Part shown: positions 33,271 through 62,970 of the stretch, one piece after another
How the letters are laid out: the number at the start of each line of letters is the position of its first letter
Position numbering within the stretch: the first letter of the stretch is position 1
Assembly: GCA_047495785.1 (NCBI GenBank)
Contig: JBLDXI010000019.1
Coordinates: 3,224,001-3,288,000 of the forward strand
Direction: 5' to 3'
DNA: 64,000 bases
Source: Lepidodermella squamata
Taxonomy: Eukaryota > Animalia > Gastrotricha
Program-made: the position numbers and the translations under genes
Notes under the pieces: generated by a model
The model's database searches: none
What the model saw: the letters and a program-made list of their open reading frames with translations, nothing else
Told to the model about the DNA's origin: nothing

Positions 33271-33780
33271 GTCCAATTTTGATTCTGTACGCAGTAAATC
33301 AGTACTTTGTTTCTTCGTTTTATCAGCCGCCTTCTTTTAACAGCTTTCAACTGAAAAACGACCAACTAACCTTTAGGGTGTCCCAATCTCTTAATTTCCA
33401 TGCTGTCATACCCATACAATTTGGCGAGTCGTAGGCCAGTCGCAGTTCGAAACTTCACGTTCCGCAAGCTCATTAGCTATATCAAATTTGGCGTTGCCGA
33501 ATATCGATTCCCAAAGGTATGGAATTGCATGGGAGAGGAGAATATGAGTCGTAGTGAGTAGTGATGATTACAAGCTCACTACGAAAGTTCTATGCTTCGA
33601 AAGTTCAATAAAGTTCAGTGAAGTTAGTTAGCTTGTTAGTAGCATTTCGAAACGTTGCATCGGTTGAAAACATCGCAGATTACATTATGAACTTGATATG
33701 TAAGCGCGATCTTGCAATTACGTACTTCATCATTCGAAGCGCAAATGCAATATTATAAAGAAAAAGTACAGCCATAAGAA

Positions 33781-34718
33781 ATGAATATCTCTCTGAGTAC
33801 ATCGTGGATTATGGCAAACATTTCTAGCAATGGCGATGATAAGCCTAGGCCTTATTTCATCGGCTGGTATACCGATCTGGGACGCACCACGATCGAGTCC
33901 CGGCTGCCGTTTTTTCTAGCCTATACAGTAGCATCTTTACTTGCTATTGTCGCCAGCGTTTGGAACTCCGTTGTCTACTACAAAAGAAGAGTCCGTCGCG
34001 ATTTCTTGATCTTGATTTCTCTCCTCGGAGGCGCAAATTCAATTTTTGCAGTTATTTACACAATATTAATCGGACTTCACCTGAAGTCAGGTTCTTGGCA
34101 AGATGGAAGCGCTGAAACTTGCTTAGTTTTGCAATTTCTCATGTATCTCATCGGCTCCAATGCGCCCTGGCTGTTCATGCTAATCACCTATGAAAGGCGG
34201 CTGTGTCTCATGTCAGATGGACGCGCTTCTTCAGCAAATTCAAAACGCGTAAGAACCTCAACATTTTATATGATAAATTTCCTAATCATAATAACAAAGC
34301 AGGTAGCCCTTCTCGCCGTATGCGGACTCTTTTTAAGCAGCCTGCTTTGGTCAACAATATTTTTCTACCCGATGAAGGCATTCAGTTTGCAGCATATCAC
34401 AGTTCCCGGAATCAGCAATGGATCGAGCATAGCGCTGTGCTCTAGCTTCGGCTATAGACTGGGGAACTACGACACAACCGTGCTTAATCTCGTCTACTAC
34501 ACTATCACAATGGGTATTCCAGGGTTCCTTATCGCAAAAAATAACTGGTAAGCAAAAGGAATTCCCCATTGCAAAAAACGTTATAGCTCCTGCCAATTAA
34601 TTCACAGGATAATTTTCAAAAAGTTTCGATCCTTCAAACGGCGCTTCAATGATAGCCCAAATGCCGATGCAGCTGGCATCAAAACTACTGCGACAGCGAG
34701 CGCTGTTCGAAATATGTA
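33781..34718 (+). pseudogene. GPCR paralogue, 5' part (TM1-TM5), truncated by the Polinton insertion
   Basis: Exons 33781-34248, 34303-34547 and 34608 onward; TYERR motif. The frame runs ...AVRNM into TAA, created by the TSD plus the first base of the element. Confidence 0.85.
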
Positions 34719-34803
34719 AGGAGGAAGTGTGAGGAGCTTAAAAAGAAACAACGTCAAAAGTTAATTTTAAATAATAAATTAGGACTCAAATTTTGGGTAC
34801 TTT
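34719..34803 (+). repeat. Left terminal inverted repeat (76 bp perfect; 85 bp with 1 mismatch)
   Basis: AGGAGGAAGTGTGAGGAGCTTAAAAAGAAACAACGTC... is the reverse complement of 56570-56654. Confidence 0.95.
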
Positions 34804-35232
34804 TCGAAGCTCAAATAACTAAAAATGACTAAAACAACGTCAAAAGTTAATTTTAAAATATAAAATCTGACTCGAAATTTTGGTACTTTTCGAAATCTGA
34901 AGCTCGAATAAAAAATGAGACTGGACTCAGGAATCGCGAACCGACCAAGCCAAGCAGTAAAAGGAAGATAGAATTTAGGTACTTTTAAATTCGAAATCAG
35001 CTAGGCTTATTATTATCTTAAAATTCATTGATTTCGCACCGAAAAAAGGCATTTTTTAATCAAATCTATCTTAAATTTAGAGAAGCTGGAGCAAGCTGGA
35101 GCCGATGTACCTGTACGCAAAAGAAAGGCCGAGAGACTCGAAAAAAAGCATGAAAAATCACCGTTTAATTTATTGGAGTAAATATTGAACCCGAACCTTT
35201 TTTAAAACATTGAATGAAATCGATTGATAAAA

Positions 35233-38134: not shown

Positions 38135-41100
38135 ATGTCTGAAGATTTCGAAATCGTCCGCGATGAAACCATAAGTCAGAGATATAACCTATCAACTTAT
38201 GAAATTAGAGTTCAAACCGGGCAAGGTTCAGAAAATGATACCCTGACTCAATTTTCGCGGCTCCAGGAGACTTTTGATAGTATCGTATCTAGGTTAAAAT
38301 CAAAGTTTCATATCGATTCGATGTGTCGAATAACGCTATTTAATTCAGAATTAGCTTATCCTATCTCGCTCGGTTATTACCGACTGGGAAGCTTGAGCGG
38401 AAATACGATTACCGCTAATGTAGAACGCGTTGCTCAATCTAAGGAGAGTTTAAAATTAGCCAAAAATTGGCGAGTGGAAGCTACTATGGTCTTCCTCGAT
38501 AAGAAGGTCTATTTAGGCGCCGGACCTGTTAAACAACGACGTGAAATTCAGAACTCGGCTCTGAAATGGCTGGCGAATCTAAGCTCGTTCATACCTGTAA
38601 ATAACAGCGATGCATTATGCTTATTTCACGCTATCATTCTGGGCATCAGCCATGAAAAATATGCGTCTTACGTAGCTGACAAGAATCGGAATTTAATTAA
38701 ATATTTGGAAAATCCGCAGTTAGAGCAAGCCGGCTTAGAATTTCAATTTCTGAAAGAAGACAAGGTCCAGCTGCGAAAAAAAGCCAGACAGTTGTGCACT
38801 GAAGCTGGGTTCGACCCGGATTCTAAACAGTGCTGCTTTAGCGTTGATGATCTTCCTCAAATTATGCGTCTCTATCCTCAATATCAGGCTGTTGTGTTTT
38901 CCTTGCTAGAAGATCGGATAATTTTTGTTTGGCCTGATACGTCAGAATTCCAAGAGACCGAGCCAAAGCGGTTATATTTAATCTGGATATCTCCTAAAAT
39001 ACTAGCTTCTGAAGGCGCCACTATATACAATAATATAGGTCATTTCGCGGCTCTGAAAAACCTGCATCATGTTGGGCAAGGAAAGACTTATTGCAAGTTG
39101 TGCCTAGTTCCAGTAACAAGATCGAACCATAATTGTTTATTTCGTTGCTATGCATGTTTTCAGCGTGTGAAGCCCGCTCAAAAATTCAGTATAGGAGCAG
39201 CGAATATTATACCTAAACAACTAACTCGATGCTCAGACGATTTTTCCTTTAGTTGTTCAGAGTGCAATAGGTGTTTTTACAGCCTAAAATGCTATGAAAA
39301 TCATCTGAAATTCAAAATTTGTGAAAAATTCGTCCGTTGTAAAACATGTGGTGATGTAAAGAGTCGTAGTAAAATTGCGTTACATCACTGCCAAGGTCGA
39401 AAATGCCAGATTTGCAAGTCAGTTCTCGGACCTGATCACAAATGTTACTGGATCAGGCCCAAGCTGAAGCTCTCGCCAGTTCCAAATCGCGTTCTCTTTT
39501 TCGATACGGAATGTTTGATAATGGATAATGGCGAGTTTTACCCGAGCACAGTGATTGCTGAATTTGCATGTGATGCATGCCGCGATCTTGAAATTCGTCA
39601 ATATCCGATAAATGGGAGTAAAATTTGCGTAAACGGGTGCTCCCAATTGTTCTTCTACGACGAGTATAACGCGTTTTCAAATTTTATGGCTCACATCTGC
39701 CGTGAAGAATACAAGGATCTCACATGTATTTCGCATTACGGAGGTTAGGTTTTTCCTTTCATCATTTACTGGAAAAAAACTCGTGTTTTCAAGGGAAATT
39801 CGATACACTTTTCGCTTTGAGGTACGCACAAGATCACAATTTGAAGATCGAAACATGTGAGCGAGCGGGAAGAATCCTCGAGCTTAAAATCACTCGTGGT
39901 CCGCGGTATTTTTTTCACAATTTAAAGAAAAACATGGAAAATAAGAAATCGTTTTAGGTTCATTGATAGCTTCAATTATTTCCTTACGAAACTCTCATGT
40001 CTACCTGCTGCATTCGGTATAGAGGGGATAGAAAAGCTTTCATACCCTCACAAGTTGCACAAGCGAGAAAATCTTCACAAAATTTTCAGCGAATGGCCTG
40101 GTATTGAATTTTATGATACTAGTAACATGGAATCCAGTGAAATATCAAGTCTGGAACAATTCATCAGCCATAAGCGCGAAAACAATCAAAAGTTCGATTT
40201 CAAGTTGGAAACGTATCGATATTGCATGCAAGACACTGTAATTCTTCGGCTGGCGACGGGACGGTTTTTTAAACTAATTCAAAATCTATCGAAATGCGAG
40301 TACGCGCCAAATGGTATTGATTGCTTCAAATATCTAACATTGTCAGCGATTTCGCACATCATTTACCGTGTATGTGTATGAAAAAATAATGAAAAACCCC
40401 ATTAATTTCTTCTTTTCAGATAAAATTCATGCCGCAAAAATCTATCAGGATAATGAATCCGCAAGGTTTAGCCCTAAGAGATGTTGCAAGTCAAGAAGCA
40501 TTGCAGTGGCTTTACTATTATTCCAAAACTAATAATGTTGAGATAGAATCAGCACTGAACGGTAGTGAATGTCGACTAACCCTAAGCGATAAAACAATTC
40601 GTAAACCCGACGGGGTTGTTCGTAATCGGGCGACTGGGGAGGTTGAACGCGTCCTTGAGTATTACGGTTAGCGTTTTTTCGGAAAAATTAAGCCCAAGTT
40701 TTAAATCTGGTTTTTTCTAGGATGCGCCATTCACGGCCACCCAGCCTGCTTTCCAGAGAACCAATTTAATTTTTTGCTGCGAAAAACGTTCGGAGAGCTG
40801 GCATATGACACTGCAAAACGCGAGGAGCAGCTGAGACAAAATAATTATAAACTGACAACGATTTATGCTTGCGAGTTCAAATCAATGTTAGCGCGCAATC
40901 AGGAGCTAGCTAAAGCACTGGAGGCAGCTGTTTCCGTAATCCCGCCGATAAAGCCTCGATCAGCTTTGCTTGTGATAATTATTCAAAAATTACATTTTTA
41001 ATCATAATTTTTTTTTTTAATTGAAGGGCGGAAGGTGTGAAGTACACCGCTGTTTCTTCGAGAAAGATGCCAATACTAGCTTGTTTTACGTTGATATAAA

Positions 41101-42598
41101 CTCCATGTATCCATTTGTTCTGTGGTCGAAAGACTTCCCGTGTCAAGATGTATCAATGCAAGTTTTAAGGTGGCGTTTGGATGATGCGAAATTGAGGGCA
41201 AAGTTTTTTGATACAACGGACCCAGCGTTTGGCCTGATATCTTGCAAGATAGTACCAAACGCTGCTTTGATAATTCCCTGTCTCCCATGGAAATACGAAG
41301 ATCGATTAGTATTTATCAGTTGTAGGACTTGCTACGTCGAGAAAAATTCAAAAACGAGATGCAATCATAATGATGAAGAGCGTGCTCTAACAGGTGTGTG
41401 GACTACTGAAGAGGTACGTATGGCTGTCGAGAAATTCGGGTATAGCCTTCAATCCGTTTTCGAAATATGGCACTACGAGTCCCGAGGAAATTTGAACTTT
41501 AAGGATTTTATAATATCGCTTCAAAAGCTCAAGTTGGAACATACACAAATAGCCGCTAATCTTGACGTAGAGAAATATGTGTCTGATTGCCGAGCGAAGT
41601 ATGGTATCGATTTAGACACGCAGGCTATGCTATCGCCGAATCCTGCTATGAAGCAGATATCGAAGATCCTACAGAATAGGTAGATGGCGTTGTTTTTTAG
41701 CACTGGTCTTGGTCTTATATCCCTCGTAGCTTTTACGGCAGATTTTGTCTCCGAAGCAATAATTCTACTGTGAAATATCTTGATTCGCCAGAGCAACTTA
41801 TAGATCTGTTCGAAAGTCCAGGGAAAGTTGTTCACACCATACTGCCAGTTGGCCCTGATGACGAATCTCAACGAGTCCGCGTTTCATATTCCGATGCTCC
41901 AGATCACGAACAACCCTGTCCGAGCAATTCAGAGATAATAGCCGCTTTCATAACGTCGTATGCAAGAATTTTGTTGTACGAAGAGGTTGAAGGAAGCTAT
42001 TCGAAATCAATAATTTTTAAAGCTCTTTGCTTTCTAGATGGCTCGACTCGGTTCGAGGGTAGTCTATTGCGATAGTAAGCATTTTTTCAATTTCCGAGAT
42101 TTTTTTCAAATTCAATTTTTTAAGCGGATTCCTTAATTTACACGCATCAAGAGGGCGAGTATAAAATTCCAGAGGGACCCTTCATGGGTGAATTCAAATC
42201 GGAATTAAGCGATGGCGAAATCATTGAATCATGGGTTTGCATCTCGCCAAAGTCATACTCATTCGTAACTAATTTCAGGTATCGATGAAAAAATAATTTC
42301 ACTGCGGATTTTTCGAGGCTTTGATATTTTCAGATCTGAGCTCAAGTTCAAAGGAATAACTCAGAGCCTCGCAGGGAAAAAATTGTCACATGAATCTTTA
42401 GTCAAGCTGTTATTTGAATCATTGAGCGAATCTGCGCATCCATCTCTGACTCTTGATCAAACCAGATTCCACCGGCGGCACGTTCCGGCTTCAGTGACTC
42501 TTGAAACGCTTGAAAAAAGAATAGCGCCACATTTGAATGATAAACGAATATTTTGCCCTACATCCTTTACTTCAATACCTTACGGGTACCGGGTATAA
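38135..42598 (+). CDS. pPolB: Protein-primed family B DNA polymerase, 10 coding exons, 1331 aa
   Basis: Introns are 39744-39793, 39906-39957, 40370-40419, 40667-40720, 40972-41026, 41680-41729, 41986-42037, 42075-42124 and 42279-42333. The spliced CDS is 3996 nt and open. Motifs: FFDTE (ExoI), HYGGKFD (ExoII), FIDS, YCMQD (ExoIII), EYYGCAIHGH, PRSALLGGRCE, YVDINSMYP, KILQNSFYGRF, YCDTDS, PKSY, KFKGIT, PYGY. Confidence 0.96.
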
Positions 42599-42630: not shown

Positions 42631-43083
42631 ATGTCAGACAGCATTTCACCGGATCGATTGGCTCCTGAGAGTGTAGCCTCTTACGAGTTTGTAAATTCTG
42701 AAGTTACCTGTTGCATTTGCCTTGGAATCATGCTTACACCTGTACACATTTCCAACTGTCAACACGCATTCTGCGAAACCTGCATTTGTCGATGGGGCGA
42801 TCGAGTTGAAGCTGGTAAAAAAGGTGGTTTGGTGGCGTATATGTACTCGAAGGCTACTTGCCCGAAATGCCGCCAATTATATACTTGCTTGGATCTCACC
42901 CCTGGGCCGGCTGTTGTAGATCGATTAGTCTCCCTTTTGCAGTTTAAATGCGTGAATGAAAAGCGCGGATGCTCAGTCAAAATGGACTATCTCAGTCTCA
43001 TGGAGCATCAAAAGAAATGCAATAAACGGAAAGTACCAAAATATACTGGAAATTTTAAATTTCTTCGTCAAAAAGCTGATTAG
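42631..43083 (+). CDS. RING-HC E3 ubiquitin ligase with a TRAF/SIAH-type zinc finger
   Basis: CCICLGIMLTPVHISNCQHAFCETCI...CPKCR (C3HC4), followed by L-x-x-x-C-x-N-x-x-RGC...EHQKKC. Confidence 0.85.
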   Translation: MSDSISPDRLAPESVASYEFVNSEVTCCICLGIMLTPVHISNCQHAFCETCICRWGDRVEAGKKGGLVAYMYSKATCPKCRQLYTCLDLTPGPAVVDRLVSLLQFKCVNEKRGCSVKMDYLSLMEHQKKCNKRKVPKYTGNFKFLRQKAD

Positions 43084-43189
43084 GGATTCAGCTTCCCAAT
43101 TGAATCAAGTCTGAAATCCATCTGAAATAAATCCATATGCACCTAAACAAAAATATGTTTGAATTTTAGGATCAAATTAACTAAAAAGA

Positions 43190-43527
43190 ATGAAAAGTTC
43201 GTACATTTTGGAGCTTAAACTGACGAATGGCAGTACTTTCTACACGACTTTCGATGAATCATCGACACTTGCTGACATCATAGCACATCTACACGCTGCT
43301 TGGCCGCCAAAATGGGGCGACAAGCTTGACCTGGATCAATTACAGCTCTACTGCAAAGATCGCGCAATCAGAAAGTCGGTGCTGCTCAAGTGTAAGTAAA
43401 TTTCTACCTTTGAACCGAGCTTGATGATTTTCCAATCCTAGCATTGAGTCGCCGCGAACTACATGGCTACAAGCATCGCACTTATTATGTCACTATTGTC
43501 TCAAAAAGCCCTCTTCCCGAGCTTTGA
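43190..43527 (+). CDS. UBL3/MUB-like ubiquitin-fold protein 1 (intron 43392-43441; 95 aa)
   Basis: LELKLTNG...DIIAHLHAAWPPKW...LQLYCKDR...VTIVSKSPLPEL matches the UBL3 pattern LRLILVSG..DIAKHVYDNWPMDW..LRLIYQGR..RETLPEP. Confidence 0.75.
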
Positions 43528-43599
43528 ACTTTCTGCTAATGTATAGTAAAGAAAAATACTATATTCGAGCTTGTTTTAAACTTAGATTTGTAACTTAAA

Positions 43600-43845
43600 A
43601 TGGAACCTCAGGCTTTTGAGGAATTTTCAGCTAATGTCGCTTGGAGAAATGGAGATCAAATTAGCTTGCGATGCCATGCGTCAATAAAAGTAGACGCTAT
43701 CCTACAGCAGATATATGACGAATGGCCAGATAGTTGGGGTGAGAAGCCGCATGTGAAAGAACTCCGACTATGTTACAACGGTAGATGCTTGCATAGGTTC
43801 TACAAACCAATAAGAAAGTATTTCCCAAGTATTTCCCAAGTGTAA
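43600..43845 (+). CDS. UBL3/MUB-like ubiquitin-fold protein 2 (3' end probably spliced to about 43863-43950; unresolved)
   Basis: IYDEWPDSWGEKPHVKELRLCYNGRCLH aligns with UBL3 VYDNWPMDWEEEQVSSPNILRLIYQGRFLH. Confidence 0.8.
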   Translation: MEPQAFEEFSANVAWRNGDQISLRCHASIKVDAILQQIYDEWPDSWGEKPHVKELRLCYNGRCLHRFYKPIRKYFPSISQV

Positions 43846-43993
43846 TTGTTTTTATCCAACAGAACTCTGCAACTATCTCCGAGTGAACGTTTTGGAGCTG
43901 ACAGCTACAGCGCTTCATGTCTAATGATTTTCTGCTATGTATAAAAGATGGGTAAAAAAAGGGATCTTTTTAATTTTAGAAACATTTGAAAAA

Positions 43994-44254
43994 ATGACTA
44001 AATGGAATTTGAAAATTCGTATCGATAAGCGATTGAGTCCGAAATTAACTCTCAGAACGATTGGCGATCTTAAGGTAAATTCTCAATTGCGAATCCCGCT
44101 AATTATAATAAGAATTATACTCTGGCAGGTTTTGTTTATACGCAATTGTCCATGCCAACCATGCGTGATTGTCTCTGGAACGACAAAAGCGAAGATCTTT
44201 CGTCTATCTGACATTGAGACCGCAATTTGCTTTTACAAACAGCGTGAAAATTAA
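43994..44254 (+). CDS. Small (about 68 aa) unknown protein (in-frame intron 44075-44128)
   Basis: ATG preceded by the acceptor TAATTTTAG, a 54-nt GTAAAT...GGCAG intron, and a CPCQPC motif. Confidence 0.45.
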   Translation: MTKWNLKIRIDKRLSPKLTLRTIGDLKVNSQLRIPLIIIRIILWQVLFIRNCPCQPCVIVSGTTKAKIFRLSDIETAICFYKQREN

Positions 44255-44311
44255 GTCGTGAAAAAAGTGATTCAGGAATGGTTTTTTTATCTTAGGTTAT
44301 AAAAATAATTG

Positions 44312-44662
44312 ATGGAAGCATCTCAAGATTGCGATTGGAGCAGCTGCGAATCCCTTGATTCTTGCAATTCTGTTGATTCTTCAACTCAAACTTTGCCTTA
44401 TGAGCCGAACTCTTCAGCTCTTCTCCTCAGGTGGGTTACTGGCGCTAAGGTCATCATAAAATGTCGAAAGTCGACTCAGATGCGCGAAATTTTGAATAAG
44501 CTGTGGGAAAAATGGCCCGATGGTTGGACAAGCCGGCCTTCGGACCCCAGAAAATTGAAAATTTACTACGGCCGGCTCAACATTCAAGACTTGACTAACG
44601 TCTACGAATTGAGCAAGGATCTTGACAAACGTCATTTGGTATTCAACGTACGCTGCGAGTAA
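44312..44662 (+). CDS. UBL3/MUB-like ubiquitin-fold protein 3
   Basis: LLLRWVTG...LWEKWPDGWTSRPSDPRKLKIYYG...LVFNVRCE. Confidence 0.75.
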   Translation: MEASQDCDWSSCESLDSCNSVDSSTQTLPYEPNSSALLLRWVTGAKVIIKCRKSTQMREILNKLWEKWPDGWTSRPSDPRKLKIYYGRLNIQDLTNVYELSKDLDKRHLVFNVRCE

Positions 44663-44761
44663 TAGTTCATCACAATTCAAACAGTTGAAATCTGTATTAA
44701 CCTGAATAATTGACGCAGTAAAATTAAATGGTTATGATATTCTTTTTTAGGCGAATTAATA

Positions 44762-45112
44762 ATGATATACTCGGCTGCGATTGAATCCCCTTCGATGAAA
44801 CCTTCAATTCCAGTAATTAACCTCGTTCAGGATGACGTAGCTATCTTACTGAAGTGGGAGAATGGCAACAAAGTAATCATGCGTTGTCGACCATGGCTAT
44901 CATGCGACTCCGTGTTAGCAGCGCTGGGGGCTGACTGGCCAAAAAATTGGGATAAAATTGGACCCACTGACAGATTGCATTTGCACTACAATAAACTTTG
45001 CCTTCCCCCTTTTGGTTATAAAGTCGGAGATTTTCTGAAAGATAGCAGACATCGCTTTGTAACGCTACATGTAAAATCATTTGAGCCCAAGATCAAGCGC
45101 ATTTGTCCTTAG
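44762..45112 (+). CDS. UBL3/MUB-like ubiquitin-fold protein 4
   Basis: ILLKWENG...ADWPKNW...LHLHYNK...FVTLHVK. Confidence 0.75.
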   Translation: MIYSAAIESPSMKPSIPVINLVQDDVAILLKWENGNKVIMRCRPWLSCDSVLAALGADWPKNWDKIGPTDRLHLHYNKLCLPPFGYKVGDFLKDSRHRFVTLHVKSFEPKIKRICP

Positions 45113-45162
45113 TAAAGTGTTTAATTAACTCTGATTTTTCTAGTGCAGTTAACTAAAATCGC

Positions 45163-45504
45163 ATGGAAATAGCAAACGATATCTCTCAAACCCTAAGCAA
45201 GACGGAAGACTCGACAATTCCAGTAATTGACATAGTTCGGAACGATCTGACTGTCATTCTTAAGTGGGTTACTGGAGATAAAGTAATCATGCACTGTGAA
45301 GAGTTGGATTGTCCGTATGACATTATTCGCAAGTTAATGGCGACCTGGCCAAAAAGATGGAAATTCGATAAATCGGCTGAACCTCATACATTATACTTAT
45401 GCTACGGCGGTCTTAAGCTGCCAGGGTGGCACAGGATGAGGTTTTTTTTACCTGCTAATGATTCCAGCCGACGATATGTAACACTTGATGTCAAATATAT
45501 GTAA
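45163..45504 (+). CDS. UBL3/MUB-like ubiquitin-fold protein 5
   Basis: VILKWVTG...ATWPKRW...EPHTLYLCYGG...YVTLDVK. It shares the leader IPVI(N/D)(L/I)V with copy 4. Confidence 0.75.
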   Translation: MEIANDISQTLSKTEDSTIPVIDIVRNDLTVILKWVTGDKVIMHCEELDCPYDIIRKLMATWPKRWKFDKSAEPHTLYLCYGGLKLPGWHRMRFFLPANDSSRRYVTLDVKYM

Positions 45505-45611: not shown

Positions 45612-46528
45612 ATGATAGCTGACTTCTACAATTCTGGATTGCCCCCGAATTTCGCGTGGAAAATAGTGAAATCATTGAAGGTTTGCTGACAAGTAGTCTG
45701 GACCTAAAACGCATTTTTTGTATTGTAGCCGTTCGACAACTTGCGACCAAAATCTGTTCAGCGAGCATCAGGATTCAGGCGGTTGAAAGTGATGTGCATT
45801 TCCGACACGCACGACAGCGATTTTGTTTCAAAGGTGTCGAAAGCTCAAACATCGGCTCAAGCTGATATTTTGGTTCACGCGGGTGACATTACGACTTTCG
45901 GAAGTTCAGCAGAACTACGTCGATTTGATCGTCTGTTATCAAGCGTCAAGCCAATGTTCCGAGAAGTAGTTGTTATCGCTGGAAATCACGATCGATGTTT
46001 GCAAAGCGGCGAATATGAGCTGAAAAATTGCATCTACTTGCAAGATGAGGCGATCAGAATCAGCGGTCTTCTGTTTTACGGCACGCCGTGGTAAGTTTCT
46101 TGAATCGTGTTTCTTGATTCAAGTTTCTTTCGCGAAGGACACCGTGGACTGACAGTCGACATTCGGCTTTCACGCGTGCGAGAGGTCGAGAAATTAGCGC
46201 GAAATGGGAGATGATTCCCAGCGATACCGACATATTAGTTACTCATAGTCCCATGTTGGGTGTTCTGGATCAAACATCGAGTGGTGAGCGGATCGGCTGC
46301 CTTTCGCTCGCTGATCAAATTTTAACTCGCATTAACCCAAAGCTTCACATTTTTGGGCACGCTCATTTCAGTAATCATGTAACAAAAGAAAAATTGAATT
46401 CAACTTTTTCTTTTTATTAAGGTCGCGGAGAATTTGAAACTGATAATACATTGTTTGTGAATGCAAGCCTGTGTGACGACGAGAACAAGTTACAGTTCAA
46501 CCCGATATCTGTGGAGTTGCTCTACTAA
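45612..46528 (+). CDS. MPPED1/2 (239FB)-like calcineurin-fold metallophosphoesterase, 4 exons, 256 aa
   Basis: CISDTH, DILVHAGD, VIAGNHD, YLQDE..I-x-GL-x-FYGTPW, DILVTHSP, PKLHIFGHAH and FVNAS are all present. Introns are 45681-45728, 46091-46137 and 46371-46421. Confidence 0.9.
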
Positions 46529-47793: not shown

Positions 47794-48537
47794 TTATTTC
47801 GGTACATAAATTACACCAGGGAAAGCGCCCACCCCAGTTCTATAGCGCATAAACTCCGGACAATCAGGACTGAGGTCGATAAGTAAGTAACGATGTCCGC
47901 CTTTGCTTGTTTCCATTTCGAAACTCTCCACTACGAACCGCCAGCGCAGCGGTTCCAATTGCAGGGCGAGATAGCGGAACGATGTGAGATCTGCACGATG
48001 CCGAAAAATGAATAAATATTTAGCATTCAGCGTCATTTCTTTGGACATTTTTCCTTTGCAGAATATTGCTTGCTGAGTAAAAAATACAGATAACTTCAAA
48101 TGATGAGAGTATCGATAAAATAATTGAAGAATTTTCGGATCGTTTCTTCCTGTATCATACAAGTCATCTATCACTAACAATGTATAAGTATCATCTCCAC
48201 TGCTTGATTGGAATTCTTCAAAGTTTAGTTGCTCTAGACCTTTGCGAAACTCAACAGTAAGACCACGGCTTTTTTCTACTTCATCCTTTATTTGCTGATG
48301 CATCCCGGTCTCAACCCCGTAAAACCATAACACTCGATGCGGCGCTGGTGATATGGATTCCGGGTCGTTAAGAATTCGTCGAATAAGCCATGTTTTGCCT
48401 AATATACATAGGATGAAATGAGATAATATTTATGAAACGCACAACTAACCTGCGCCGCTAGGACCTATAACGAGCGAGCAGAAAGGGGCTTGCAAGCTAA
48501 GCGATACATCTATTTCTGATGGCAAATCGCCAGACAT
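47794..48537 (-). CDS. A32/FtsK-type genome-packaging ATPase (intron 48399-48449; 230 aa)
   Basis: Walker A GPSGAG|KT is restored by splicing. Walker B LLVIDD and the SHH..SVFFTQQ motif are present. Confidence 0.92.
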
Positions 48538-49076
48538 GACTGGTGACCGCTACAGGTACCGAAATGACGGGACATTTTCTCAGATTTGCTAACTTTAAAT
48601 ATTCGATTCACCTGATCAACTATGAAATTATCCGTATTTTTATCAGGAAGCATTTGCGCAATCTTATCCATAGATGCTCCCCTCGCGAACCAGTGAAGCG
48701 TTAAATATGCGTAGTAGCCACAAACCGCCGTTGAATCGCTCTGATATTTATGCTTGTTATAAATGTAATTATTTTTCGAGTTGATGTTCGTTAAAAATGC
48801 TTCTATAGCCTTGTTATAGAAGTTCCCGCGCCGACCATAGCTATCAAAGAATAAAGCCGGCTCGTTTGTTTGTGGGACATAAATTGACAGCCAATGACTT
48901 CCCGGCTGACCAGCGGCGTCTGTATTTACAATTAGAGCCATGGGACGCTCGCTCATCCCCTGATATCGTGATAGATAATCCCATGGTATAGTCTTTTTAA
49001 CTGGAATTTTATTGAGATTTCTATCACAGCCAAGTAGACAGTCCAACTGGAGGGTATTTAGTTGACCTCCGTTCAT
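48510..49076 (-). CDS. Adenain/Ulp1-like (clan CE) maturation cysteine protease
   Basis: IVNTD...PGSHW, FFDSYG and YQ...AVCGYY provide the His, Asp, Gln and Cys catalytic residues. Confidence 0.92.
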   Translation of the reverse strand: MNGGQLNTLQLDCLLGCDRNLNKIPVKKTIPWDYLSRYQGMSERPMALIVNTDAAGQPGSHWLSIYVPQTNEPALFFDSYGRRGNFYNKAIEAFLTNINSKNNYIYNKHKYQSDSTAVCGYYAYLTLHWFARGASMDKIAQMLPDKNTDNFIVDQVNRIFKVSKSEKMSRHFGTCSGHQSCLAICHQK

Positions 49077-49081
49077 GCTAT

Positions 49082-50371
49082 TCACGTAAAGTCGACCAGG
49101 ACGTTTCGTGCAAAATTCAGCTCGATAACTTGATCCGTCTCAAAGTAACAGAGAAGTATCAGGTTATCGGCTAATGCTTTTTTAAATAATAAATCAATAG
49201 AAAGCACGCCACTTTTAACCAGACTGTATGCACTACGACTTGAGTCGGGTGAGAGATCGAATCCTATAAAGGAAAAGCCGTCCTTGCTGTATTCTGATAG
49301 CTTTATACCATTTGTTTTAGTCGAGTAAGGAAACAGCGTCTCCCTAAGAGCACTCATAGCCCGAGCCGATGTATTTTCGCCCTCTCCAAATTCGAGCGGG
49401 CTGTTTGGGACATGCTCGCTATCTATTGTGACAGACACGCGCTGAACGCCAGCGTTTTTAAAGTTGTAAGGACTGGTGAAGATGTCGCCTTTGAAATCAC
49501 TATCGCTAACGAAAGACATCACCAGTCGTCTGGGTATTTTCCCTAGTATAACGTGCCCAAGGTTGTAGTTAAGAGATCCCTTTTGCAAATTCAAGACTTT
49601 AATGAACGATCTGTTCACACCATACTTGGCCGTGGTTTTTGTTAGTGTTCGATTCAGCGCCAACGTAAATTGCGGAGATACGCGAACGCGACGCAATTTG
49701 AGCTTAGCATCAGTAACTGTTAGTGTATAGTCCATCTTGTCCCCGGCAGGTTTCATCAGAGCAAACGCCTCAGGTGCGCGTATGAAAGTCAACTTGAAGG
49801 GCGTAGCCGGAATCAGAAATTTCGGCTGAGAGAATAGCTCTAAATGTGGCTTGCCTATAAGAACCATCTCGCCTTGCTTTGCCCAAGCAAGTCTGGCGGT
49901 ATGACCCTTGCCAGCAGGATCGCTGACTTTACCAGCTTCGTCTGAATAATAGCCTTGCAATGCTAAGTAGCTATCCTTAGCTGTCGGATCACAACTCAGT
50001 AAAGTTGAAATATAAGCCTTATAATTATATGTCGGAGCCGGTTCGCTGATTTGCGTATTATTTATGCTCATATCTATTTGACTGAACATACTATGCAACA
50101 GAAGGTTAACCGGCGAGCAAGTAAGGTCAGCTAAAGTCTTTGACGCGTCGCCATTCACTATTTTACATGTTATTTCCACGTATGAACGGCTCAAATCTGT
50201 CCAATCATTGCTTGGAGGGATGTCAAAATCAATGCGTGACTGATTGGCGATCGCGGAAACTGGTCCATATTCTGTAATGTAATTGCTCTCTATCTCAACT
50301 TGAGTAGGGTTCAACGAAAAGACATTCAGCTCAGCGCGAATTGCGTTTTCAGAAGAGGGGTGGACGTACAT
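49082..50371 (-). CDS. Double jelly-roll major capsid protein (PY)
   Basis: Intronless 429-aa ORF with Polinton MCP motifs (ELNVF..PTQ, DLSRSY, PVNLLLHSMFSQID, YNYKAY, G-x-IP-x-R, PYNF, FDLSPD). Confidence 0.92.
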   Translation of the reverse strand: MYVHPSSENAIRAELNVFSLNPTQVEIESNYITEYGPVSAIANQSRIDFDIPPSNDWTDLSRSYVEITCKIVNGDASKTLADLTCSPVNLLLHSMFSQIDMSINNTQISEPAPTYNYKAYISTLLSCDPTAKDSYLALQGYYSDEAGKVSDPAGKGHTARLAWAKQGEMVLIGKPHLELFSQPKFLIPATPFKLTFIRAPEAFALMKPAGDKMDYTLTVTDAKLKLRRVRVSPQFTLALNRTLTKTTAKYGVNRSFIKVLNLQKGSLNYNLGHVILGKIPRRLVMSFVSDSDFKGDIFTSPYNFKNAGVQRVSVTIDSEHVPNSPLEFGEGENTSARAMSALRETLFPYSTKTNGIKLSEYSKDGFSFIGFDLSPDSSRSAYSLVKSGVLSIDLLFKKALADNLILLCYFETDQVIELNFARNVLVDFT

Positions 50372-52791: not shown

Positions 52792-52872
52792 TTATCGGCG
52801 ATGCACGCGTTTGTTACCGCGTTTGCGTGCTGTGGATTTTCGTTTCCGGATAGCTCGTCTAGGACCAGGCAT
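52792..52872 (-). CDS. 26-aa protamine-like peptide (below the ORF-track cut-off)
   Basis: MPGPRRAIRKRKSTARKRGNKRVHRR* (13 of 26 residues R/K). The ATG overlaps the integrase stop (TAATG) and the ORF exactly fills the gap to the next gene. Confidence 0.6.
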   Translation of the reverse strand: MPGPRRAIRKRKSTARKRGNKRVHRR

Positions 52873-54119
52873 TACTTTCCCCTCTTTTTGGCCGATTTTC
52901 GCTCCTTTATATATTCATTTTGGACGTCTTTTATTTGGTCAATTGGCTCCCATGAACTTTGAGATTTGGGAAACCCAACCCAGCTAACTAAAACCCGCGT
53001 TGTTCCATCCTTGAATTTTCGCTTCTCTTTACTCACTTCATCTATCAGGTATTCATCCGGTAATTTGACTTTTTGAAGCTCATAGTGATAAAAAACGCCT
53101 GCAACAGGTTCGGTGTAGTCGCCGTTTTCTGTGCTCCATCCATTCAACTTGTATGTATGCGGCCCGTACCTGTCTGGCTTGATGGCTTTCGCTATTTTGA
53201 AATACTCATCCGTATAAGTAAAATGACGAGCGCGGGCAAAAACGCCTCTCTCTGCTGAGATCCGTACTACATCGTCTAATTTAAAAGCTGATGGCTGCCT
53301 GCGACCTTCTTCTATGTCCGCTCCGAAAACGTTATTGTAAGCTATATACTGCTTAGGGCTGTCCTCGAAAATATCGAGATTAAGCTCCTTGTCACTCCCG
53401 ATTTTACGCCCACTCTCCTTGTCATTGTACAACTCTGCGGGTGTGAACTTGGTAGATGAGTGACGGGAGTCATTGTAAACTCTAACGATGTTCTGCAAAT
53501 CATCGACGAATCTACCGTCGTTTCGCGCCATCGCAAGCTTAGCCAGTCGCATGCGCAGTAATTTGTTGAATGACTCTATTTGAGGAACTTTCTTTTCCGA
53601 ATTCGTAGCGAAAAAATGAATGGATTCTGATTTCAAATATCGCTCAACGTGTTGGTTGAAAAATTCTGAACCTCTATCGAACACAACAGCGTACGGTTTT
53701 TGCTTAGCGTCCTTCATAACTATTTTCAGAGCTCTAAGTGTTTCGGGACCGGTTTTATTTCGCATCGTTTGCACCCAGGCGAAACGACTGTATGTGTCCT
53801 TGGCTGTAAGTATATATTGCACGTTGTCGTTCTCGCCCTTTACATTTCTCACGTCCACCAAGTCCATAGCGAACAAACTTCTTCGACTAAAGCATGCCAC
53901 CTTCCGGGTTACTCGATTCCTCGTTCCGACCTGCTTATAAACGCTCCACGTACGTTGATTTCCCAACCAGTTCCTTACTTGCCGCATTGTGATCTTTCGA
54001 CCTGGATACTTGAACCTGTAGGCTTTGTAAAGAGCTGATACGCTACCGAGACCGCCTGGTTCACCCGGGTCGAAGTAAATTTTTCGCAAATCTCGGTCAT
54101 CTTGATCTAACGTTGGCAT
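52872..54119 (-). CDS. Retroviral-like (rve) DDE integrase with a C-terminal chromodomain
   Basis: IYFDP..PG, MDLVD, YILTAKDTYSRFAW, FDRGSEF, IESFNKLLR and YN...HSS..FTP, plus the chromodomain LVSWVGFP....SWEP. Probable start is MPTLDQ. Confidence 0.95.
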   Translation of the reverse strand: MPTLDQDDRDLRKIYFDPGEPGGLGSVSALYKAYRFKYPGRKITMRQVRNWLGNQRTWSVYKQVGTRNRVTRKVACFSRRSLFAMDLVDVRNVKGENDNVQYILTAKDTYSRFAWVQTMRNKTGPETLRALKIVMKDAKQKPYAVVFDRGSEFFNQHVERYLKSESIHFFATNSEKKVPQIESFNKLLRMRLAKLAMARNDGRFVDDLQNIVRVYNDSRHSSTKFTPAELYNDKESGRKIGSDKELNLDIFEDSPKQYIAYNNVFGADIEEGRRQPSAFKLDDVVRISAERGVFARARHFTYTDEYFKIAKAIKPDRYGPHTYKLNGWSTENGDYTEPVAGVFYHYELQKVKLPDEYLIDEVSKEKRKFKDGTTRVLVSWVGFPKSQSSWEPIDQIKDVQNEYIKERKSAKKRGK

Positions 54120-54174
54120 TTTCGTTGTATATTCCAACTCTAGCGTTTTGCGTTTTAAATAGTGACATTCTGTA

Positions 54175-56569: not shown

Positions 56570-56654
56570 AAAGTACCAAAAATTTGAGTCCTAATTTATT
56601 ATTTAAAATTAACTTTTGACGTTGTTTCTTTTTAAGCTCCTCACACTTCCTCCT
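56570..56654 (-). repeat. Right terminal inverted repeat
   Basis: ...GTTGTTTCTTTTTAAGCTCCTCACACTTCCTCCT, followed by the TSD TATGTA. Confidence 0.95.
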
Positions 56655-56949
56655 TATGTATGAAAGCTGGCAGGCGCGTGAACTCTTCTTTGCTAAGCAG
56701 ACTCTCGTGTCATTAGCTATCTTTACAACATTTCGCATGCCAACTATGTTTAATTTGATATTCCTGATTTTTTACGAAGATCTCGGCCCGAAATTAATAA
56801 CAGCGGACGTTTTTCAAGCTTCAGCACTCGTCTACGCAATTGAGGCGAGTATCGAGCCAGCGGTTCGATGTTTGAAGCCGGGGTTCTTCGATAATCTTTG
56901 GAGGAAATTCAAGCAAGCGTTCAGATTGACAGCTCCAAGTCCGGCGTAA
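56655..56949 (+). pseudogene. 3' part (TM6-TM7) of the GPCR split by the Polinton
   Basis: Removing the element and one TSD gives GTT CGA AAT ATG TAT GAA AGC TGG CAG = VRNMYESWQARELFFAKQ, matching the paralogue TLRNMHNKWQARELFFAKQ. Confidence 0.92.
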
Positions 56950-57108
56950 AGGCTCCCCTATTACCCGTTAACACGAGAATCTGAAGGCTCATGACTAATG
57001 AATTGTCAACAATTCTTCACAGGCACTCATATATGTCTAACCGCTTGATGAAATGTCTTCGCTAACTGAAGCGAGCTTAGTTCTATATGAGATTCTATTG
57101 TGGCTTAA

Positions 57109-59471
57109 CCCTTTCACGGCGGGAATTTCGACTTTGAAAATTCGCAGAAACTTGAATTTCATGATTTCTTGATCGTCCTTTTGAGTAATATTTCTTTCCG
57201 ATGTTGGCTACAAGGTTCTGAGACCGTTATCTTGCATGGTCAACCTGAGATTAAAATTTCCATTTTCTCAACTTGAAATTTCATAGGTTCCTGATCCTTT
57301 TTTGATCCAACAAAAAATACCACAGTGTTCGCCATAGTGACCTCTTTGTTAATTGTTTCGAGTTGGAAAGTAAAAATGACGACACTATTGAAATTCAATA
57401 AAACCGGGCGAATTCGTTCTATCCGCCCAGACTTATACAGGCAGAGTGCGTGATTTTTGTGCCTGTCGCGAGGAAAAACTGGAAAAGCTAAATTCAGATC
57501 TATTGCTGAGGCTCTAAACTTTTTCAAACAAGTTTTTTGGTGATGTAAGTGAGGGGGAATCTTAGGGATATTCATGGCAGTAATTTAGAATATAAAATTC
57601 CACAGGTAAAGGCACCAGATACAGAAATTAGGGTGCTCAAAAAATCGCCTGAAATCCGCTGGGCGGATAGGGCATTTCGGCCTGTTTTTGTACAGCCTCA
57701 CAGGTGATAGATAAAGATAAGCGGATTTCATCAGCGCCTTTGAAAACCCCTAGAACTGCAGTCAAATTCTCCCGCAAATGAATAAGAGTTAAATGGTGAG
57801 CGCTGCGTAAACCTGAGTGAGCGTAGCAGAATTAGGAGAAGCGCAACGAGCGCTAGAAATCTGTGCGAGTGTAGCACCACCCGGTGTTATGTAGCAAATC
57901 TGAAGTACCGTAGCAAAAATCTGAGTGAACGTAGCAAGTCGAAAAAGTTATAATTACAGATTATTTAAAACATTTATTTTAATTATTCAAACAAAATTGA
58001 ATTGGGCAATTTCATGTTTTCAGATCATCCATCATCCCAACCTATGTTTTCAGATCATCGCAAAACATTTTTTTCGGATAGAGCTAGAAAAACTAAGGTA
58101 TTTTTTAGTAGGTATTTTTATATACTCTTGCGACTTTTGTTAACACTTGATTGTTAACACAATTAATTATTATGAATTTCTCGGAAAAGTAGGATCTTCA
58201 ACTGAGGTGGTGGGTGATTTCCATCTATCGCCAGCCTTCGCCCTCTTCAAAACCGTTTATCGGTATAGACTTTGACTAAATGAAAATATTACTATTATTA
58301 ATATTTATATACTCTTGCCACTTTTCATCCCACGCAGTCGCTCACCTGTAAAAAACAAAACGTGAATCATCGCCAAGTCATAGCTACCTGCCTCCTGGCC
58401 ACGCTTTACCGGTGTTATTTTTATTGTTGTTGGACCTTGATGTTACAAGACCTTATAAGACCTTACAAGACGCTTCTAGTCTTGCGGAGAAAAATCGCTA
58501 TGCGGAGATTTTGATACCCTTAACGACGATAAAACGAGGGATTTCGACTATTCTGCCTTAAAAAACTGCCGGACTTGGCAGGAGACAGTAGGCGGCGCAG
58601 GCGGCGGCAGGGCATTACAGCATTTTATAGCAGATGAGAGCAGCCTAAATTTTGCTATATAAAACCGTAAAGCGCGTTTTTACGTTAAGCAGCAGCATGA
58701 CGCCCGCCCCATGCGTAACCAGAACTGTGGGCGGCCCGCCTCCTCGCAGTGCCAGTCCCGCTCTTCCTCGCTTAAGATCTCCAGATCTCTCGAGTCTCCA
58801 GCGCGCACGCCGCGCACAATCGAATGACTATAACGATGGAAGAATAGTAAAAGTTTCTATTCCTCCATGGTAGACCATAAAATCGACGGATAGAGACAAT
58901 TCGCAACACGAAAAAACTAATTTTCTTATAATTTTCAAAAAATTTCCGGATAAGCCAACCGCGGCAGATGAATGGCAAAGTTGCCGTAAACCTGCAAAGA
59001 CAGCCCAAAATGCTAGAAAATTAATTATGAGACTGGCAAGATTTAGCTGGGCTCATTCGATAGACCGCGAAATCTAGTATTTATTTGAGAATGATTATTT
59101 CGTCTGTCTATTTTTTTTAATAATTAAATTTATAACGGGCGTTAGGTGGCACTATAGAAAGATCGTTTGCTTCCTATCTGTTACAGTGTTGTCTATATAA
59201 CAATATAACAATATAGCAACTTTTTACCAAATTCAGTTTGGATCAAATTGCTACGCTCACCCTTATTTTTGCGACCGTCGCACCGCCTGCCGCGTCATAG
59301 CACGCGTTTACGCAGCGGATTAGATGAATGCGCGACGGATTACGTATAAGTGCTACTAAACACGCGTTGCTGCTACACTGTTTTGATTTCTGCTACGTTC
59401 ACTCTGCAGCGCAACTCACTTTTCTGCTACGCTCGCTCAGCCACCCAATGAATAATTCCGCCATGAAAGGG
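57109..59471. mobile_element. Non-autonomous piggyBac-type DNA transposon (about 2.36 kb)
   Basis: TTAA|CCCTTTCACGGCGG...CCGCCATGAAAGGG|TTAA. Internal inverted clusters of (G)CGTAGCA/TGCTACG lie at about 57800-57940 and 59250-59440. No transposase ORF. Confidence 0.8.
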
Positions 59472-59597
59472 TTAAATGCAAAGCTTTACGTATAGCGCTG
59501 GATTACAGCTATCCTGTTGATAGTTCTATCCCCTTTTAAAACTCTGAGGTTAGCAAAAAAGCCAAACCTTTGGTATATTTTATTGAGATGCATTAGT

Positions 59598-61748: not shown

Positions 61749-62066
61749 TTTTGAAAATGATTTGATTCATGTACATTTTGGAGGGTTTTATAGCCTTGCT
61801 TATGTTTTCGCGGACCACATACCGCAGACTTAGGAAAGCAGCTTATCTAGGAAGTACTGGCCTTATCTGAAACAAAAACTAAATATGTCTTGAAGGATCA
61901 TAGATGCAGATGGAATCGACCTATATTATGAAACTTTTGAAACGATATCCAATAACGACACTACTGAGATATCCAAAAAACAAGTACACCGCAACTCATT
62001 TATTAGCGAAAGTTGGTTATACACATGTACAAAAGAGTCTAGTTTTAACGGGGGATTGAAGATCTT

Positions 62067-62804: not shown

Positions 62805-62970
62805 TTCTCATGACTTCAATTCTCTATTATATTTGCATTCATAAGCCTTTTGAGTGATAAAGTAACTGATGATCTCGCTTGAATGGCAGCAATTAGTCTA
62901 TGTTATCTGAGATGTTGTCAATTATTGCTAAGACTCGAAACTATAATAGCTGAACTAATCGAAGCATGTA

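What the first reader, a model, noticed from the sequence alone, without database searches (positions are those of the whole stretch)
43190..45504. Tandem array of five divergent UBL3/MUB-like ubiquitin-fold genes in a Polinton: candidate new viral ubiquitin-interference system
Seen: five 80-120-aa ORFs share beta-strand-(T/N)G, helix, W-P-x-x-W, L-x-(L/I)-x-Y and a final beta-strand. Copy 2 (IYDEWPDSW...LRLCYNGRCLH) and copy 1 (..PLPEL) track UBL3 (VYDNWPMDW...LRLIYQGRFLH...TLPEP). None has a diglycine end or a clear CAAX box (copy 2's end is unresolved; copies 3 and 4 end RCE and ICP). Established: UBL3/MUB is a usually low-copy, prenylated ubiquitin-fold family. Plant MUBs bind Ubc4/5-type E2s and block their charging, and mammalian UBL3 sorts proteins into small extracellular vesicles. 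Inference: a captured UBL3 was amplified and diversified into untethered decoys or E2 inhibitors working with the adjacent RING, or it steers vesicle-mediated virion exit. I know of no described viral UBL3 array.
Basis: partly seen in the sequence, partly recalled or inferred. Interest (0 to 1): 0.92.

Follow-up and report, generated by a model that had tools for sequence, protein, structure and literature searches.

The report
Five anchorless UBL3-like genes in Polinton
A virus-like mobile element in an animal genome carries five tandem, very diverged copies of a small ubiquitin-fold gene of the UBL3/MUB type that have lost the lipid-anchor signal; this is a real and unusual cargo, but its function is only inferred.

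Summary
Five same-strand ORFs between 43190 and 45504 are paralogues: a profile of copies 3-5 finds copy 2 (E 2.7e-12) and copy 1 (E 2.2e-5) among 3161 six-frame fragments of the window, and nothing else. The likeness is to UBL3/MUB specifically. Only Pfam PF13881 scores, profile-profile E is 1.7e-10 against UBL3 proteins but 0.02 against polyubiquitin, and the best PDB fold match of the copy 5 model is Arabidopsis MUB3 bound to its E2. Two defining or functional UBL3/MUB features are missing. No copy ends in CAAX, and the lap-bar loop Pro-Phe motif that blocks E2 charging is not kept in place. The array lies inside a Polinton/Maverick-like element with protein-primed polymerase pieces, a chromodomain integrase, a weak adenain-like protease hit and diverged terminal inverted repeats. 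It sits next to a TRIM-type RING gene. No close relative turned up among 1.84 billion representative proteins, and no paper describes such an array. Best reading: a captured, duplicated UBL3-type cargo acting as soluble, non-conjugatable binders of the host ubiquitin machinery. That mechanism is inference, and this element copy looks old. Copies 1 and 2 are short as plain ORFs. Interest is moderate, not 0.92.

The parts
43190..43527 (+). UBL3-like copy 1. The plain ORF is 43190-43399 (69 aa). A candidate last-strand piece lies downstream in another frame, after a 50-nt GTAAGT...TAG stretch.
   Evidence: HMM of copies 3-5 gives E 2.2e-5. PF13881 scores 15 bits, below its cut-off. The AF2 model of the plain ORF has pLDDT 62.7 with strand-strand-helix-strand-strand order. 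The downstream piece is not significant alone. The joined model was not tested.
43600..43927 (+). UBL3-like copy 2. The plain ORF is 43600-43845 (81 aa). It has one frame discontinuity near the 3' end (a very short intron or a frameshift, unresolved), followed by a candidate last-strand piece.
   Evidence: PF13881 scores 26.4 bits, above the gathering score of 23. HMM of copies 3-5 gives E 2.7e-12. The downstream piece is not significant alone.
43994..44254 (+). Unassigned small ORF between copies 2 and 3; not a member of the family.
   Evidence: No Pfam hit. hhalign against the family gives probability 0.7%. No PDB hit.
44312..44662 (+). UBL3-like copy 3, a full-length single ORF ending R-C-E.
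   Evidence: PF13881 scores 20.7 bits, E 4.6e-4. Alignments. DNA-level repeat D1.
44762..45112 (+). UBL3-like copy 4, a full-length single ORF ending I-C-P.
   Evidence: No Pfam hit alone. 39-40% identical to copy 5. DNA-level repeats D1 and D2.
45163..45504 (+). UBL3-like copy 5, a full-length single ORF ending K-Y-M.
   Evidence: In the AF2 model the core, residues 28-113, has block pLDDT means of 79-93 and a beta-grasp order of elements, while the N-terminal 24 residues are disordered. Foldseek top hits are MUB3 chains in 4x57, with UBL3 1wgh at rank 6.
42631..43083 (+). RING-finger gene (150 aa) 107 nt upstream of copy 1: a C3HC4 RING plus a Sina-type zinc finger.
   Evidence: PF00097 E 1.6e-7 and PF21361 E 9e-4. 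Best PDB sequence hits are TRIM5 and TRIM21 RINGs, E 6.6e-7.
45612..46420 (+). Calcineurin-like metallophosphatase gene just downstream of copy 5, interrupted by short GT..AG stretches of about 48 nt.
   Evidence: PF00149 E 2.2e-9. Sequence read.
38135..42598 (+). Protein-primed family B DNA polymerase. It is not one continuous ORF: homology lies in several pieces and more than one frame. Introns and frameshifts cannot be told apart here.
   Evidence: PF03175 hits two separate pieces, E 2e-14 and 4.6e-14, covering profile positions 54-187 and 214-366. Fragment list.
48510..49085 (-). Candidate adenain/Ulp1-like cysteine protease.
   Evidence: PF00770 E 8e-4 and PF02902 E 2.7e-3, both below their cut-offs.
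52872..54137 (-). Retroviral-type integrase with a C-terminal chromodomain.
   Evidence: PF00665 at 33.2 bits and PF00385 at 29.7 bits, both above their cut-offs.
33624..34889 (.). Left terminal inverted repeat region; the outer end is fuzzy.
   Evidence: Inverted repeats I2-I6. blastn arms are 66-99% identical.
56570..62958 (.). Right terminal inverted repeat region. The arms at 56570-56661 and 62392-62958 are separated by about 5.7 kb that has its own 274-nt inverted ends and holds a secreted LamG+trypsin ORF.

Best explanation
The five ORFs are a tandemly duplicated, deeply diverged family of small beta-grasp proteins derived from the UBL3/MUB branch of the ubiquitin-fold superfamily. A Polinton/Maverick-like element carries them as accessory (cargo) genes, between its polymerase plus RING gene and a metallophosphatase gene. 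Shown: paralogy, the UBL3/MUB-specific sequence signal, the beta-grasp model, the position inside the element, and the lack of a CAAX box and of a diglycine end. Inferred: without a prenyl anchor or a conjugatable end they would be soluble and non-conjugatable. The structural core is kept while surfaces have diverged. They most likely act by non-covalent binding to host ubiquitin-system partners that UBL3/MUB normally engages, namely the backside of Ube2D-type E2 enzymes. Their effect would be as cytosolic competitors or adaptors, possibly together with the neighbouring TRIM-type RING E3. The specific MUB way of blocking E2 charging (lap-bar loop Pro-Phe) is probably not retained. The confidence given is for the whole statement: the identity part alone is about 0.85, the binding mechanism alone about 0.3.
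For: Paralogy is shown. The UBL3/MUB affinity rests on several results. PF13881 is the only family scoring for copies 1-3, and copy 2 is above the gathering score. The PDB profile search gives UBL3 entries 1wgh and 2gow at 2e-5 as the best single-domain hits. In an exhaustive profile search of 1.84e9 representatives, the only single-domain hits (P0003, P0006, P0007, P0013) are all PF13881 proteins, three of them with Cys-rich CAAX-like ends. hhalign gives 96.9%, E 1.7e-10 against the UBL3 profile and 2.3%, E 0.02 against polyubiquitin. Fold: the copy 5 core has block pLDDT means of 79-93 and a beta-grasp order of elements, and its top PDB matches are MUB3 chains in the MUB3:UBC8 complex. Long-term constraint: copies 3-5 are open over 113-116 codons (chance about 2e-3 each) although dS between copies is 1.4 or more; dN/dS is 0.26-0.72, but unreliable at that saturation. 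Context: polymerase, integrase, a weak protease hit and inverted repeats, and a RING 107 nt upstream. Known biology: UBL3/MUB binds the backside of Ube2D-type E2s (PMC4996978), and non-prenylated UBL3 is cytosolic and inactive as a MARCH1 cofactor (PMC9001657).
Against: No binding or expression data exist. The lap-bar loop motif that carries MUB's inhibition is not conserved: copy 5 keeps only the Pro, copy 4 has P-P-F-G one element too early, and copies 3 and 4 have no Pro in the loop (one search read against PMC4996978). Copies 4 and 5 give no Pfam hit on their own. The Foldseek margin of MUB3 over plain ubiquitin is tiny (8.6e-7 against 1.1e-6), and the model's alignment included UBL3 proteins, which biases it. 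As plain ORFs, copies 1 and 2 lack the last strand, and their downstream pieces are not significant. The element copy looks old: the inverted repeat arms are 66-99% identical and the polymerase is in pieces. No relative of the family was found anywhere, so conservation across elements is untested.
Confidence: 0.55

Rival explanations
1. The array is a relic. The family once worked in this Polinton lineage, but in this old, inactive copy the genes are no longer expressed or constrained; copies 1 and 2 are already truncated pseudogenes.
For: The inverted repeat arms have diverged to 66-87% identity over most of their length. The polymerase is split into many pieces. No Walker A motif occurs in any frame of the element. 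The capsid candidates have no detectable relatives. Copies 1 and 2 stop before the last strand, and copy 2 has a frame discontinuity.
Against: Copies 3-5 are intact over 113-116 codons each. Short GT..AG stretches of 48-54 nt occur in neighbouring genes, so some apparent breaks may be introns. Copy 1's downstream piece follows a canonical GTAAGT...TAG stretch.
Confidence: 0.3
2. The ORFs are generic ubiquitin-like domains, like the Ubl modules already reported on nematode Maverick cargo proteins. The UBL3/MUB likeness is convergent or an artefact of weak scores.
For: Pfam scores are low: only copy 2 passes the cut-off, and copies 4 and 5 score nothing. Ubiquitins follow MUB3 closely in Foldseek. 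Ubiquitin-like domains are known on Maverick cargo (bioRxiv 10.1101/2022.07.12.499685).
Against: The family-specific signal is consistent across independent tests: PF13881 and not PF00240, UBL3 and not single ubiquitin in PDB, and all four single-domain hits in 1.84e9 proteins being PF13881. hhalign gives E 1.7e-10 against UBL3 and 0.02 against ubiquitin. W-P-x-x-W is invariant in both the array and the UBL3 proteins.
Confidence: 0.08
3. The array is host DNA, a host UBL3-like gene cluster caught inside a rearranged or composite element, and not cargo of the element.
For: The right end of the element is rearranged and encloses a host-like secreted LamG+trypsin gene. No other copy of the element was available for comparison.
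Against: The array lies between the polymerase/RING genes and the minus-strand block ending in the integrase, well inside both repeat arms. It shares compact spacing and the same pyrimidine-rich..TAG element upstream of the start codon with the RING and phosphatase genes. No cellular protein close to these copies exists in the libraries searched.
Confidence: 0.1
4. The copies act as UBL3 does in vesicle sorting or as a MARCH-type E3 cofactor, steering proteins or particles into vesicles.
For: Family relationship to UBL3. Three plain-ORF ends have a Cys at the second-last position.
Against: Both known roles need the C-CAAX cysteines and the prenyl anchor (PMC10511055, PMC9001657). No copy has a CAAX box, and copy 5 has no C-terminal Cys at all.
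Confidence: 0.05

Closest known systems
Cellular UBL3 / MUB (membrane-anchored ubiquitin-fold proteins; Pfam PF13881)
   Same: Small single-domain beta-grasp of about 115 aa, W-P-x-x-W after helix 1, no diglycine end, a long loop before the last strand. They are the best sequence and fold matches.
   Different: There is no CAAX box or C-CAAX cysteine pair, and the lap-bar loop Pro-Phe is not kept. Copies 3-5 have a 25-35 residue disordered N-terminal extension. There are five tandem copies at 20-40% identity, inside a mobile element and not at a low-copy host locus.
Ubiquitin-like N-terminal domains of nematode Maverick cargo proteins (WASP proteases, KRMA kinases; bioRxiv 10.1101/2022.07.12.499685)
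   Same: Ubiquitin-fold modules carried as cargo by Polinton/Maverick elements and shuffled or diversified within them.
   Different: Those are N-terminal domains fused to an enzyme and are described as ubiquitin-like in general. Here the proteins are stand-alone, of UBL3/MUB type, and arrayed five times. The N-terminus of the LamG+trypsin ORF in this window shows no such domain.
Virus-encoded ubiquitins and UBLs (baculovirus v-ubi, giant-virus ubiquitin-family proteins, pestivirus ubiquitin inserts; also a giant-virus 'RING and ubiquitin domain' protein)
   Same: A ubiquitin-fold gene captured by a virus. These are structural matches in the viral library.
   Different: Those named in the library are ubiquitin proper or generic UBLs; several are fused or conjugatable. 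No named match in the viral library is a UBL3/MUB, and none is a tandem array. A survey of giant-virus ubiquitin machinery does not mention UBL3/MUB.

Membership tests
UBL3/MUB (PF13881) | Beta-grasp (ubiquitin) fold | tested here: met
   The copy 5 model core has block pLDDT means of 79-93 with strand-strand-helix-strand-strand-short helix-strand order, and more than 500 ubiquitin-fold PDB matches. The copy 1 model is weak (pLDDT 62.7) but shows the same order as far as it goes. Copies 2-4 were not modelled.
UBL3/MUB (PF13881) | Sequence match to the family profile above its curated score | tested here: inconclusive
   Copy 2 scores 26.4 bits against a cut-off of 23. Copy 3 scores 20.7 and copy 1 scores 15, both below it. 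Copies 4 and 5 give no hit. At profile level the match is clear: E 1.7e-10 and 2e-5 to the PDB UBL3 entries.
UBL3/MUB (PF13881) | W-P-x-x-W motif after helix 1 | tested here: met
   Invariant in all five copies and in the four UBL3-family proteins recovered.
UBL3/MUB (PF13881) | C-terminal CAAX prenylation box with a nearby upstream Cys (conserved in all orthologues per PMC10511055) | tested here: not met
   No copy ends in C-a-a-X, either as a plain ORF or in the candidate downstream pieces. The ends are K-C-K (or P-E-L), S-Q-V (or L-H-V), R-C-E, I-C-P and K-Y-M.
UBL3/MUB (PF13881) | Lap-bar loop (K/R)-x-P-F-G before the last strand, needed to block E2 charging (PMC4996978) | tested here: not met
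   In alignment A4 the loop of copy 5 keeps the Pro but not the Phe, and copies 3 and 4 have neither. Copy 4 has P-P-F-G earlier, directly after strand 4. Some recovered UBL3-family proteins also lack P-F, so this is a functional feature and not a strict family one.
UBL3/MUB (PF13881) | Binding to the backside of Ube2D/Ubc4/5-type E2 | not testable with these tools
   There is no complex prediction or binding data. The only pointer is that the top fold match is MUB3 in its E2 complex.
Polinton/Maverick element | Protein-primed family B DNA polymerase | tested here: met
   PF03175 hits two pieces, E 2e-14 and 4.6e-14. The gene is not one continuous ORF.
Polinton/Maverick element | Retroviral-type (rve) integrase | tested here: met
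   PF00665 at 33.2 bits plus a chromodomain, in a 421-aa ORF.
Polinton/Maverick element | Terminal inverted repeats | tested here: met
   Arms of about 1.1-1.3 kb, 66-99% identical; the right arm is split by about 5.7 kb. The exact termini and the target-site duplication could not be defined.
Polinton/Maverick element | Adenain-like cysteine protease | tested here: inconclusive
   PF00770 E 8e-4 and PF02902 E 2.7e-3, both below their cut-offs.
Polinton/Maverick element | Double and single jelly-roll capsid proteins and an FtsK/A32-type packaging ATPase | tested here: inconclusive
   The candidate ORFs 49082-50371 and 50889-52376 have no Pfam, PDB or protein-library hits. No Walker A motif occurs in any frame of the element.

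The most novel reading that the evidence does not exclude
A Polinton lineage captured a UBL3/MUB gene, removed its membrane anchor and amplified it into a set of diversified soluble decoys. Each decoy would be tuned to a different host E2 or other ubiquitin-system partner, and they would be expressed together with a TRIM-type RING E3 as one ubiquitin-interference cassette, possibly as a polycistronic unit resolved at the acceptor-like sites before each start codon.
Probability: 0.2. Interest if true: 0.8.

Novelty: new variant of a known kind. Interest (0 to 1): 0.55.

Why it matters
Viruses and virus-like elements often capture ubiquitin. UBL3/MUB is a different branch, and its three known roles (tethering E2s, sorting proteins into vesicles, and MARCH1 cofactor) all depend on a prenyl anchor. 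An anchorless, five-fold diversified version inside a Polinton, next to a RING E3, would be a natural set of UBL3 variants separated from membrane targeting. It could show which UBL3 surfaces matter and how a mobile element engages the host E2 layer. It also adds to the recent finding that Mavericks carry ubiquitin-fold modules as cargo. The value is limited for now by a single, probably old copy and by the lack of expression data.

Tried and rejected
- Word-indexed protein searches with copies 3 and 5 found nothing.
- The exhaustive profile search found no member of this family elsewhere, only distant UBL3 proteins and polyubiquitins that score by summing repeats.
- The sources of the best UBL3 hits (a Mortierella, a Marasmius, two unplaced) gave no clue to a donor.
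- The ORF between copies 2 and 3 (43994-44254) was tested as a sixth copy and rejected.
- The downstream pieces that would supply the last strand of copies 1 and 2 were tested alone, exon by exon, against the family's C-terminal profile, Pfam and the UBL3 profile. None was significant.
- dN/dS among copies is not informative, because dS is 1.4 or more or cannot be calculated.
- The N-terminus of the LamG+trypsin ORF was tested for a Ubl domain like the nematode Maverick proteases and has none.
- Rfam and tRNA scans of the window gave nothing that could place the host.
- A capsid candidate used the last protein search and found no relative.
- The vesicle-sorting reading was rejected on the missing C-CAAX.
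- The strict MUB-type block of E2 charging was marked down on the missing lap-bar motif.
Full report
**Observation.**
They align with an invariant Gly in the first hairpin, W-P-x-x-W after the helix, and a Leu in the following strand.
- The paralogy is not a by-eye effect. A profile built only from copies 3-5 picks out copy 2 (E 2.7e-12) and copy 1 (E 2.2e-5) from all 3161 stop-to-stop fragments of the 64-kb window, and the next fragment scores E 0.58.
- Copies 3-5 still share 63-74% nucleotide identity over 46-83 nt at a 410-423 nt period, which is the mark of tandem duplication.
- Protein identities are 20-28%, and 39-40% for copies 4 and 5.

**What family.** Every test points to the UBL3/MUB branch and not to ubiquitin in general.
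- Pfam gives only PF13881 (Rad60-SLD_2, the UBL3/MUB model). Copy 2 scores 26.4 bits against a cut-off of 23, copy 3 scores 20.7 and copy 1 scores 15. Copy 1 also has a similarly weak, below-cut-off hit to UBX (15.9 bits), and copies 4 and 5 have no hit alone.
- A profile of the five copies, searched against PDB sequences, gives mouse and human UBL3 (1wgh, 2gow) at 2e-5 as the best single-domain hits. Polyubiquitins rank higher only by summing weak repeats.
- An exhaustive profile search of 1.84 billion representative proteins gave only 13 hits at E 1e-3 or better, and none below 1e-10. The four single-domain hits are all strong PF13881 proteins, three of them with Cys-rich CAAX-like ends.
- Profile-profile comparison gives 96.9% probability and E 1.7e-10 against those UBL3 proteins. 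Against one of them alone it gives 94.5% and E 7.7e-8. Against a polyubiquitin control it gives 2.3% and E 0.02.
- The AF2 model of copy 5 has a confident core (residues 28-113, block pLDDT means 79-93) with the beta-grasp order of elements, and a disordered N-terminal 24 residues. Its two best PDB matches are the MUB3 chains of the Arabidopsis MUB3:UBC8 complex, and mouse UBL3 is at rank 6.
- Two cautions apply. The margin over ubiquitin in that fold search is very small, and the alignment used for the model contained UBL3 proteins.

**What is missing.**
- No copy ends in a CAAX box or a diglycine. The CAAX box and a nearby Cys are conserved in all UBL3 orthologues (PMC10511055), so a defining feature is tested and not met.
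- I therefore call these UBL3/MUB-derived, not UBL3 orthologues.
- The lap-bar loop motif (K/R)-x-P-F-G, which carries MUB's block of E2 charging (PMC4996978), is not kept at the loop before the last strand. Copy 5 keeps the Pro only, and copies 3 and 4 have neither residue. Copy 4 has P-P-F-G, but directly after strand 4.

**Copies 1 and 2.**
- As plain ORFs they stop before the last strand.
- For copy 2, a similar-looking piece lies downstream in another frame. I count one frame discontinuity and cannot tell whether it is a very short intron or a frameshift.
- Tested alone and by reference, neither piece is significant.
- The full-length models of copies 1 and 2 are therefore untested.

**Context.**
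- The array lies inside a Polinton/Maverick-like element. This has protein-primed polymerase pieces (PF03175), a chromodomain integrase and a weak adenain/Ulp1-like protease hit. Its terminal inverted repeats run about 33624-34889 on the left, against 56570-56661 plus 62392-62958 on the right.
- The polymerase is not one continuous ORF. Homology sits in several pieces and in more than one frame. Because 48-54 nt GT..AG stretches are evident in neighbouring genes, I cannot separate introns from frameshifts, so I give no break count beyond 'several'.
- Capsid and packaging ATPase genes were not detected.
- The repeat arms are 66-99% identical, so this copy is probably old.
- A 150-aa RING gene lies 107 nt upstream of copy 1. 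It has a C3HC4 RING plus a Sina-type zinc finger, and its best PDB matches are the TRIM5 and TRIM21 RINGs. A metallophosphatase gene follows copy 5.
- Flanking genes with EB, Sushi, LamG and trypsin domains indicate an animal host.

**Mechanism.**
- Shown: a UBL3/MUB-derived beta-grasp family, amplified in tandem, without an anchor or a conjugation signal, inside the element and next to a RING.
- Inferred from known biology: UBL3/MUB binds the backside of Ube2D-type E2s (PMC4996978). All known UBL3 roles need the prenyl anchor, and a non-prenylatable mutant is cytosolic and inactive as a MARCH1 cofactor (PMC9001657, PMC10511055). An anchorless relative that still binds would act as a soluble competitor or adaptor.
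- The conserved positions are core residues while surfaces differ, which fits diversified binders.
- Long-term constraint is suggested by three open frames of 113-116 codons despite saturated synonymous divergence. Present-day activity is unknown.

**Novelty.**
- No paper in the library holds UBL3 together with Maverick, and none holds Polinton together with UBL3 or the membrane-anchored ubiquitin-fold name. A survey of giant-virus ubiquitin machinery does not mention UBL3/MUB.
- Ubiquitin-like domains on nematode Maverick cargo proteins are known, as are viral ubiquitins.
- I therefore rate this a new variant of a known kind.

- Distribution was judged from protein-level searches only.
- The joined-exon test was left out, as stated above.

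1. While looking at the unassigned ORF between copies 2 and 3, I wrote out ubiquitin's sequence from memory in my working.
2. In my working I also located where copy 2 changes frame and considered what might account for it.

Noticed in passing
window 42600-45612, + strand: A pyrimidine-rich run ending in TAG lies 6-20 nt upstream of the start codon of 7 of the 8 + strand genes from the RING to the metallophosphatase (8 of 8 with a looser pattern). Background for all ATGs in the window is 0.196, binomial P 7e-5; the test is post hoc. It looks like a splice acceptor and could mark trans-splicing of a polycistronic transcript or 5'-UTR introns.
   Followed up: partly
window 56656-62375: About 5.7 kb with its own 274-nt inverted ends (83% complementary) splits the right repeat region of the element. 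It holds a 716-aa ORF (59598-61748, minus strand) with a signal-peptide-like start, LamG-type domains and a trypsin domain. It may be a nested insertion, a rearrangement or a cargo gene. The pieces were compared apart only.
   Followed up: partly
window 33781-34551 (+), 62067-62537 (-), 56656-56949 (+): An ORF of unknown function lies inside the terminal inverted repeat and so occurs at both ends, with a third, partial, inverted copy at 56656-56949.
   Followed up: no
window 54745-56369, + strand: Three ORFs lie between the integrase and the right repeat: one that by eye ends like a protein-kinase C-lobe (54745-55089, not scanned against Pfam), a TBP-domain ORF (55076-55723, PF00352 E 3.5e-14), and one with a weak ResIII helicase hit (55758-56369). 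These are unusual accessory genes for such an element.
   Followed up: no
window 44762-44850 and 45163-45260: The disordered N-terminal extensions of copies 4 and 5 share a short conserved run of hydrophobic residues (I-P-V-I-x-x-V) flanked by acidic and Ser/Thr residues. From my own knowledge this resembles a SUMO-interaction-type short motif. It is a lead only and was not tested.
   Followed up: no
viral structure library (no window coordinates): The best viral structural match of the copy 5 model is an unnamed 113-aa protein, A0A8F1AE78 (E 7.7e-8, 17% identity), ahead of all named viral ubiquitins. It could be another viral UBL3-like protein, but it could not be looked up here.
   Followed up: no
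window 62969-63910: A pair of 52-nt inverted repeats (96% complementary), 838 nt apart, lies just outside the right end of the element. It looks like a small non-autonomous transposon.
   Followed up: no
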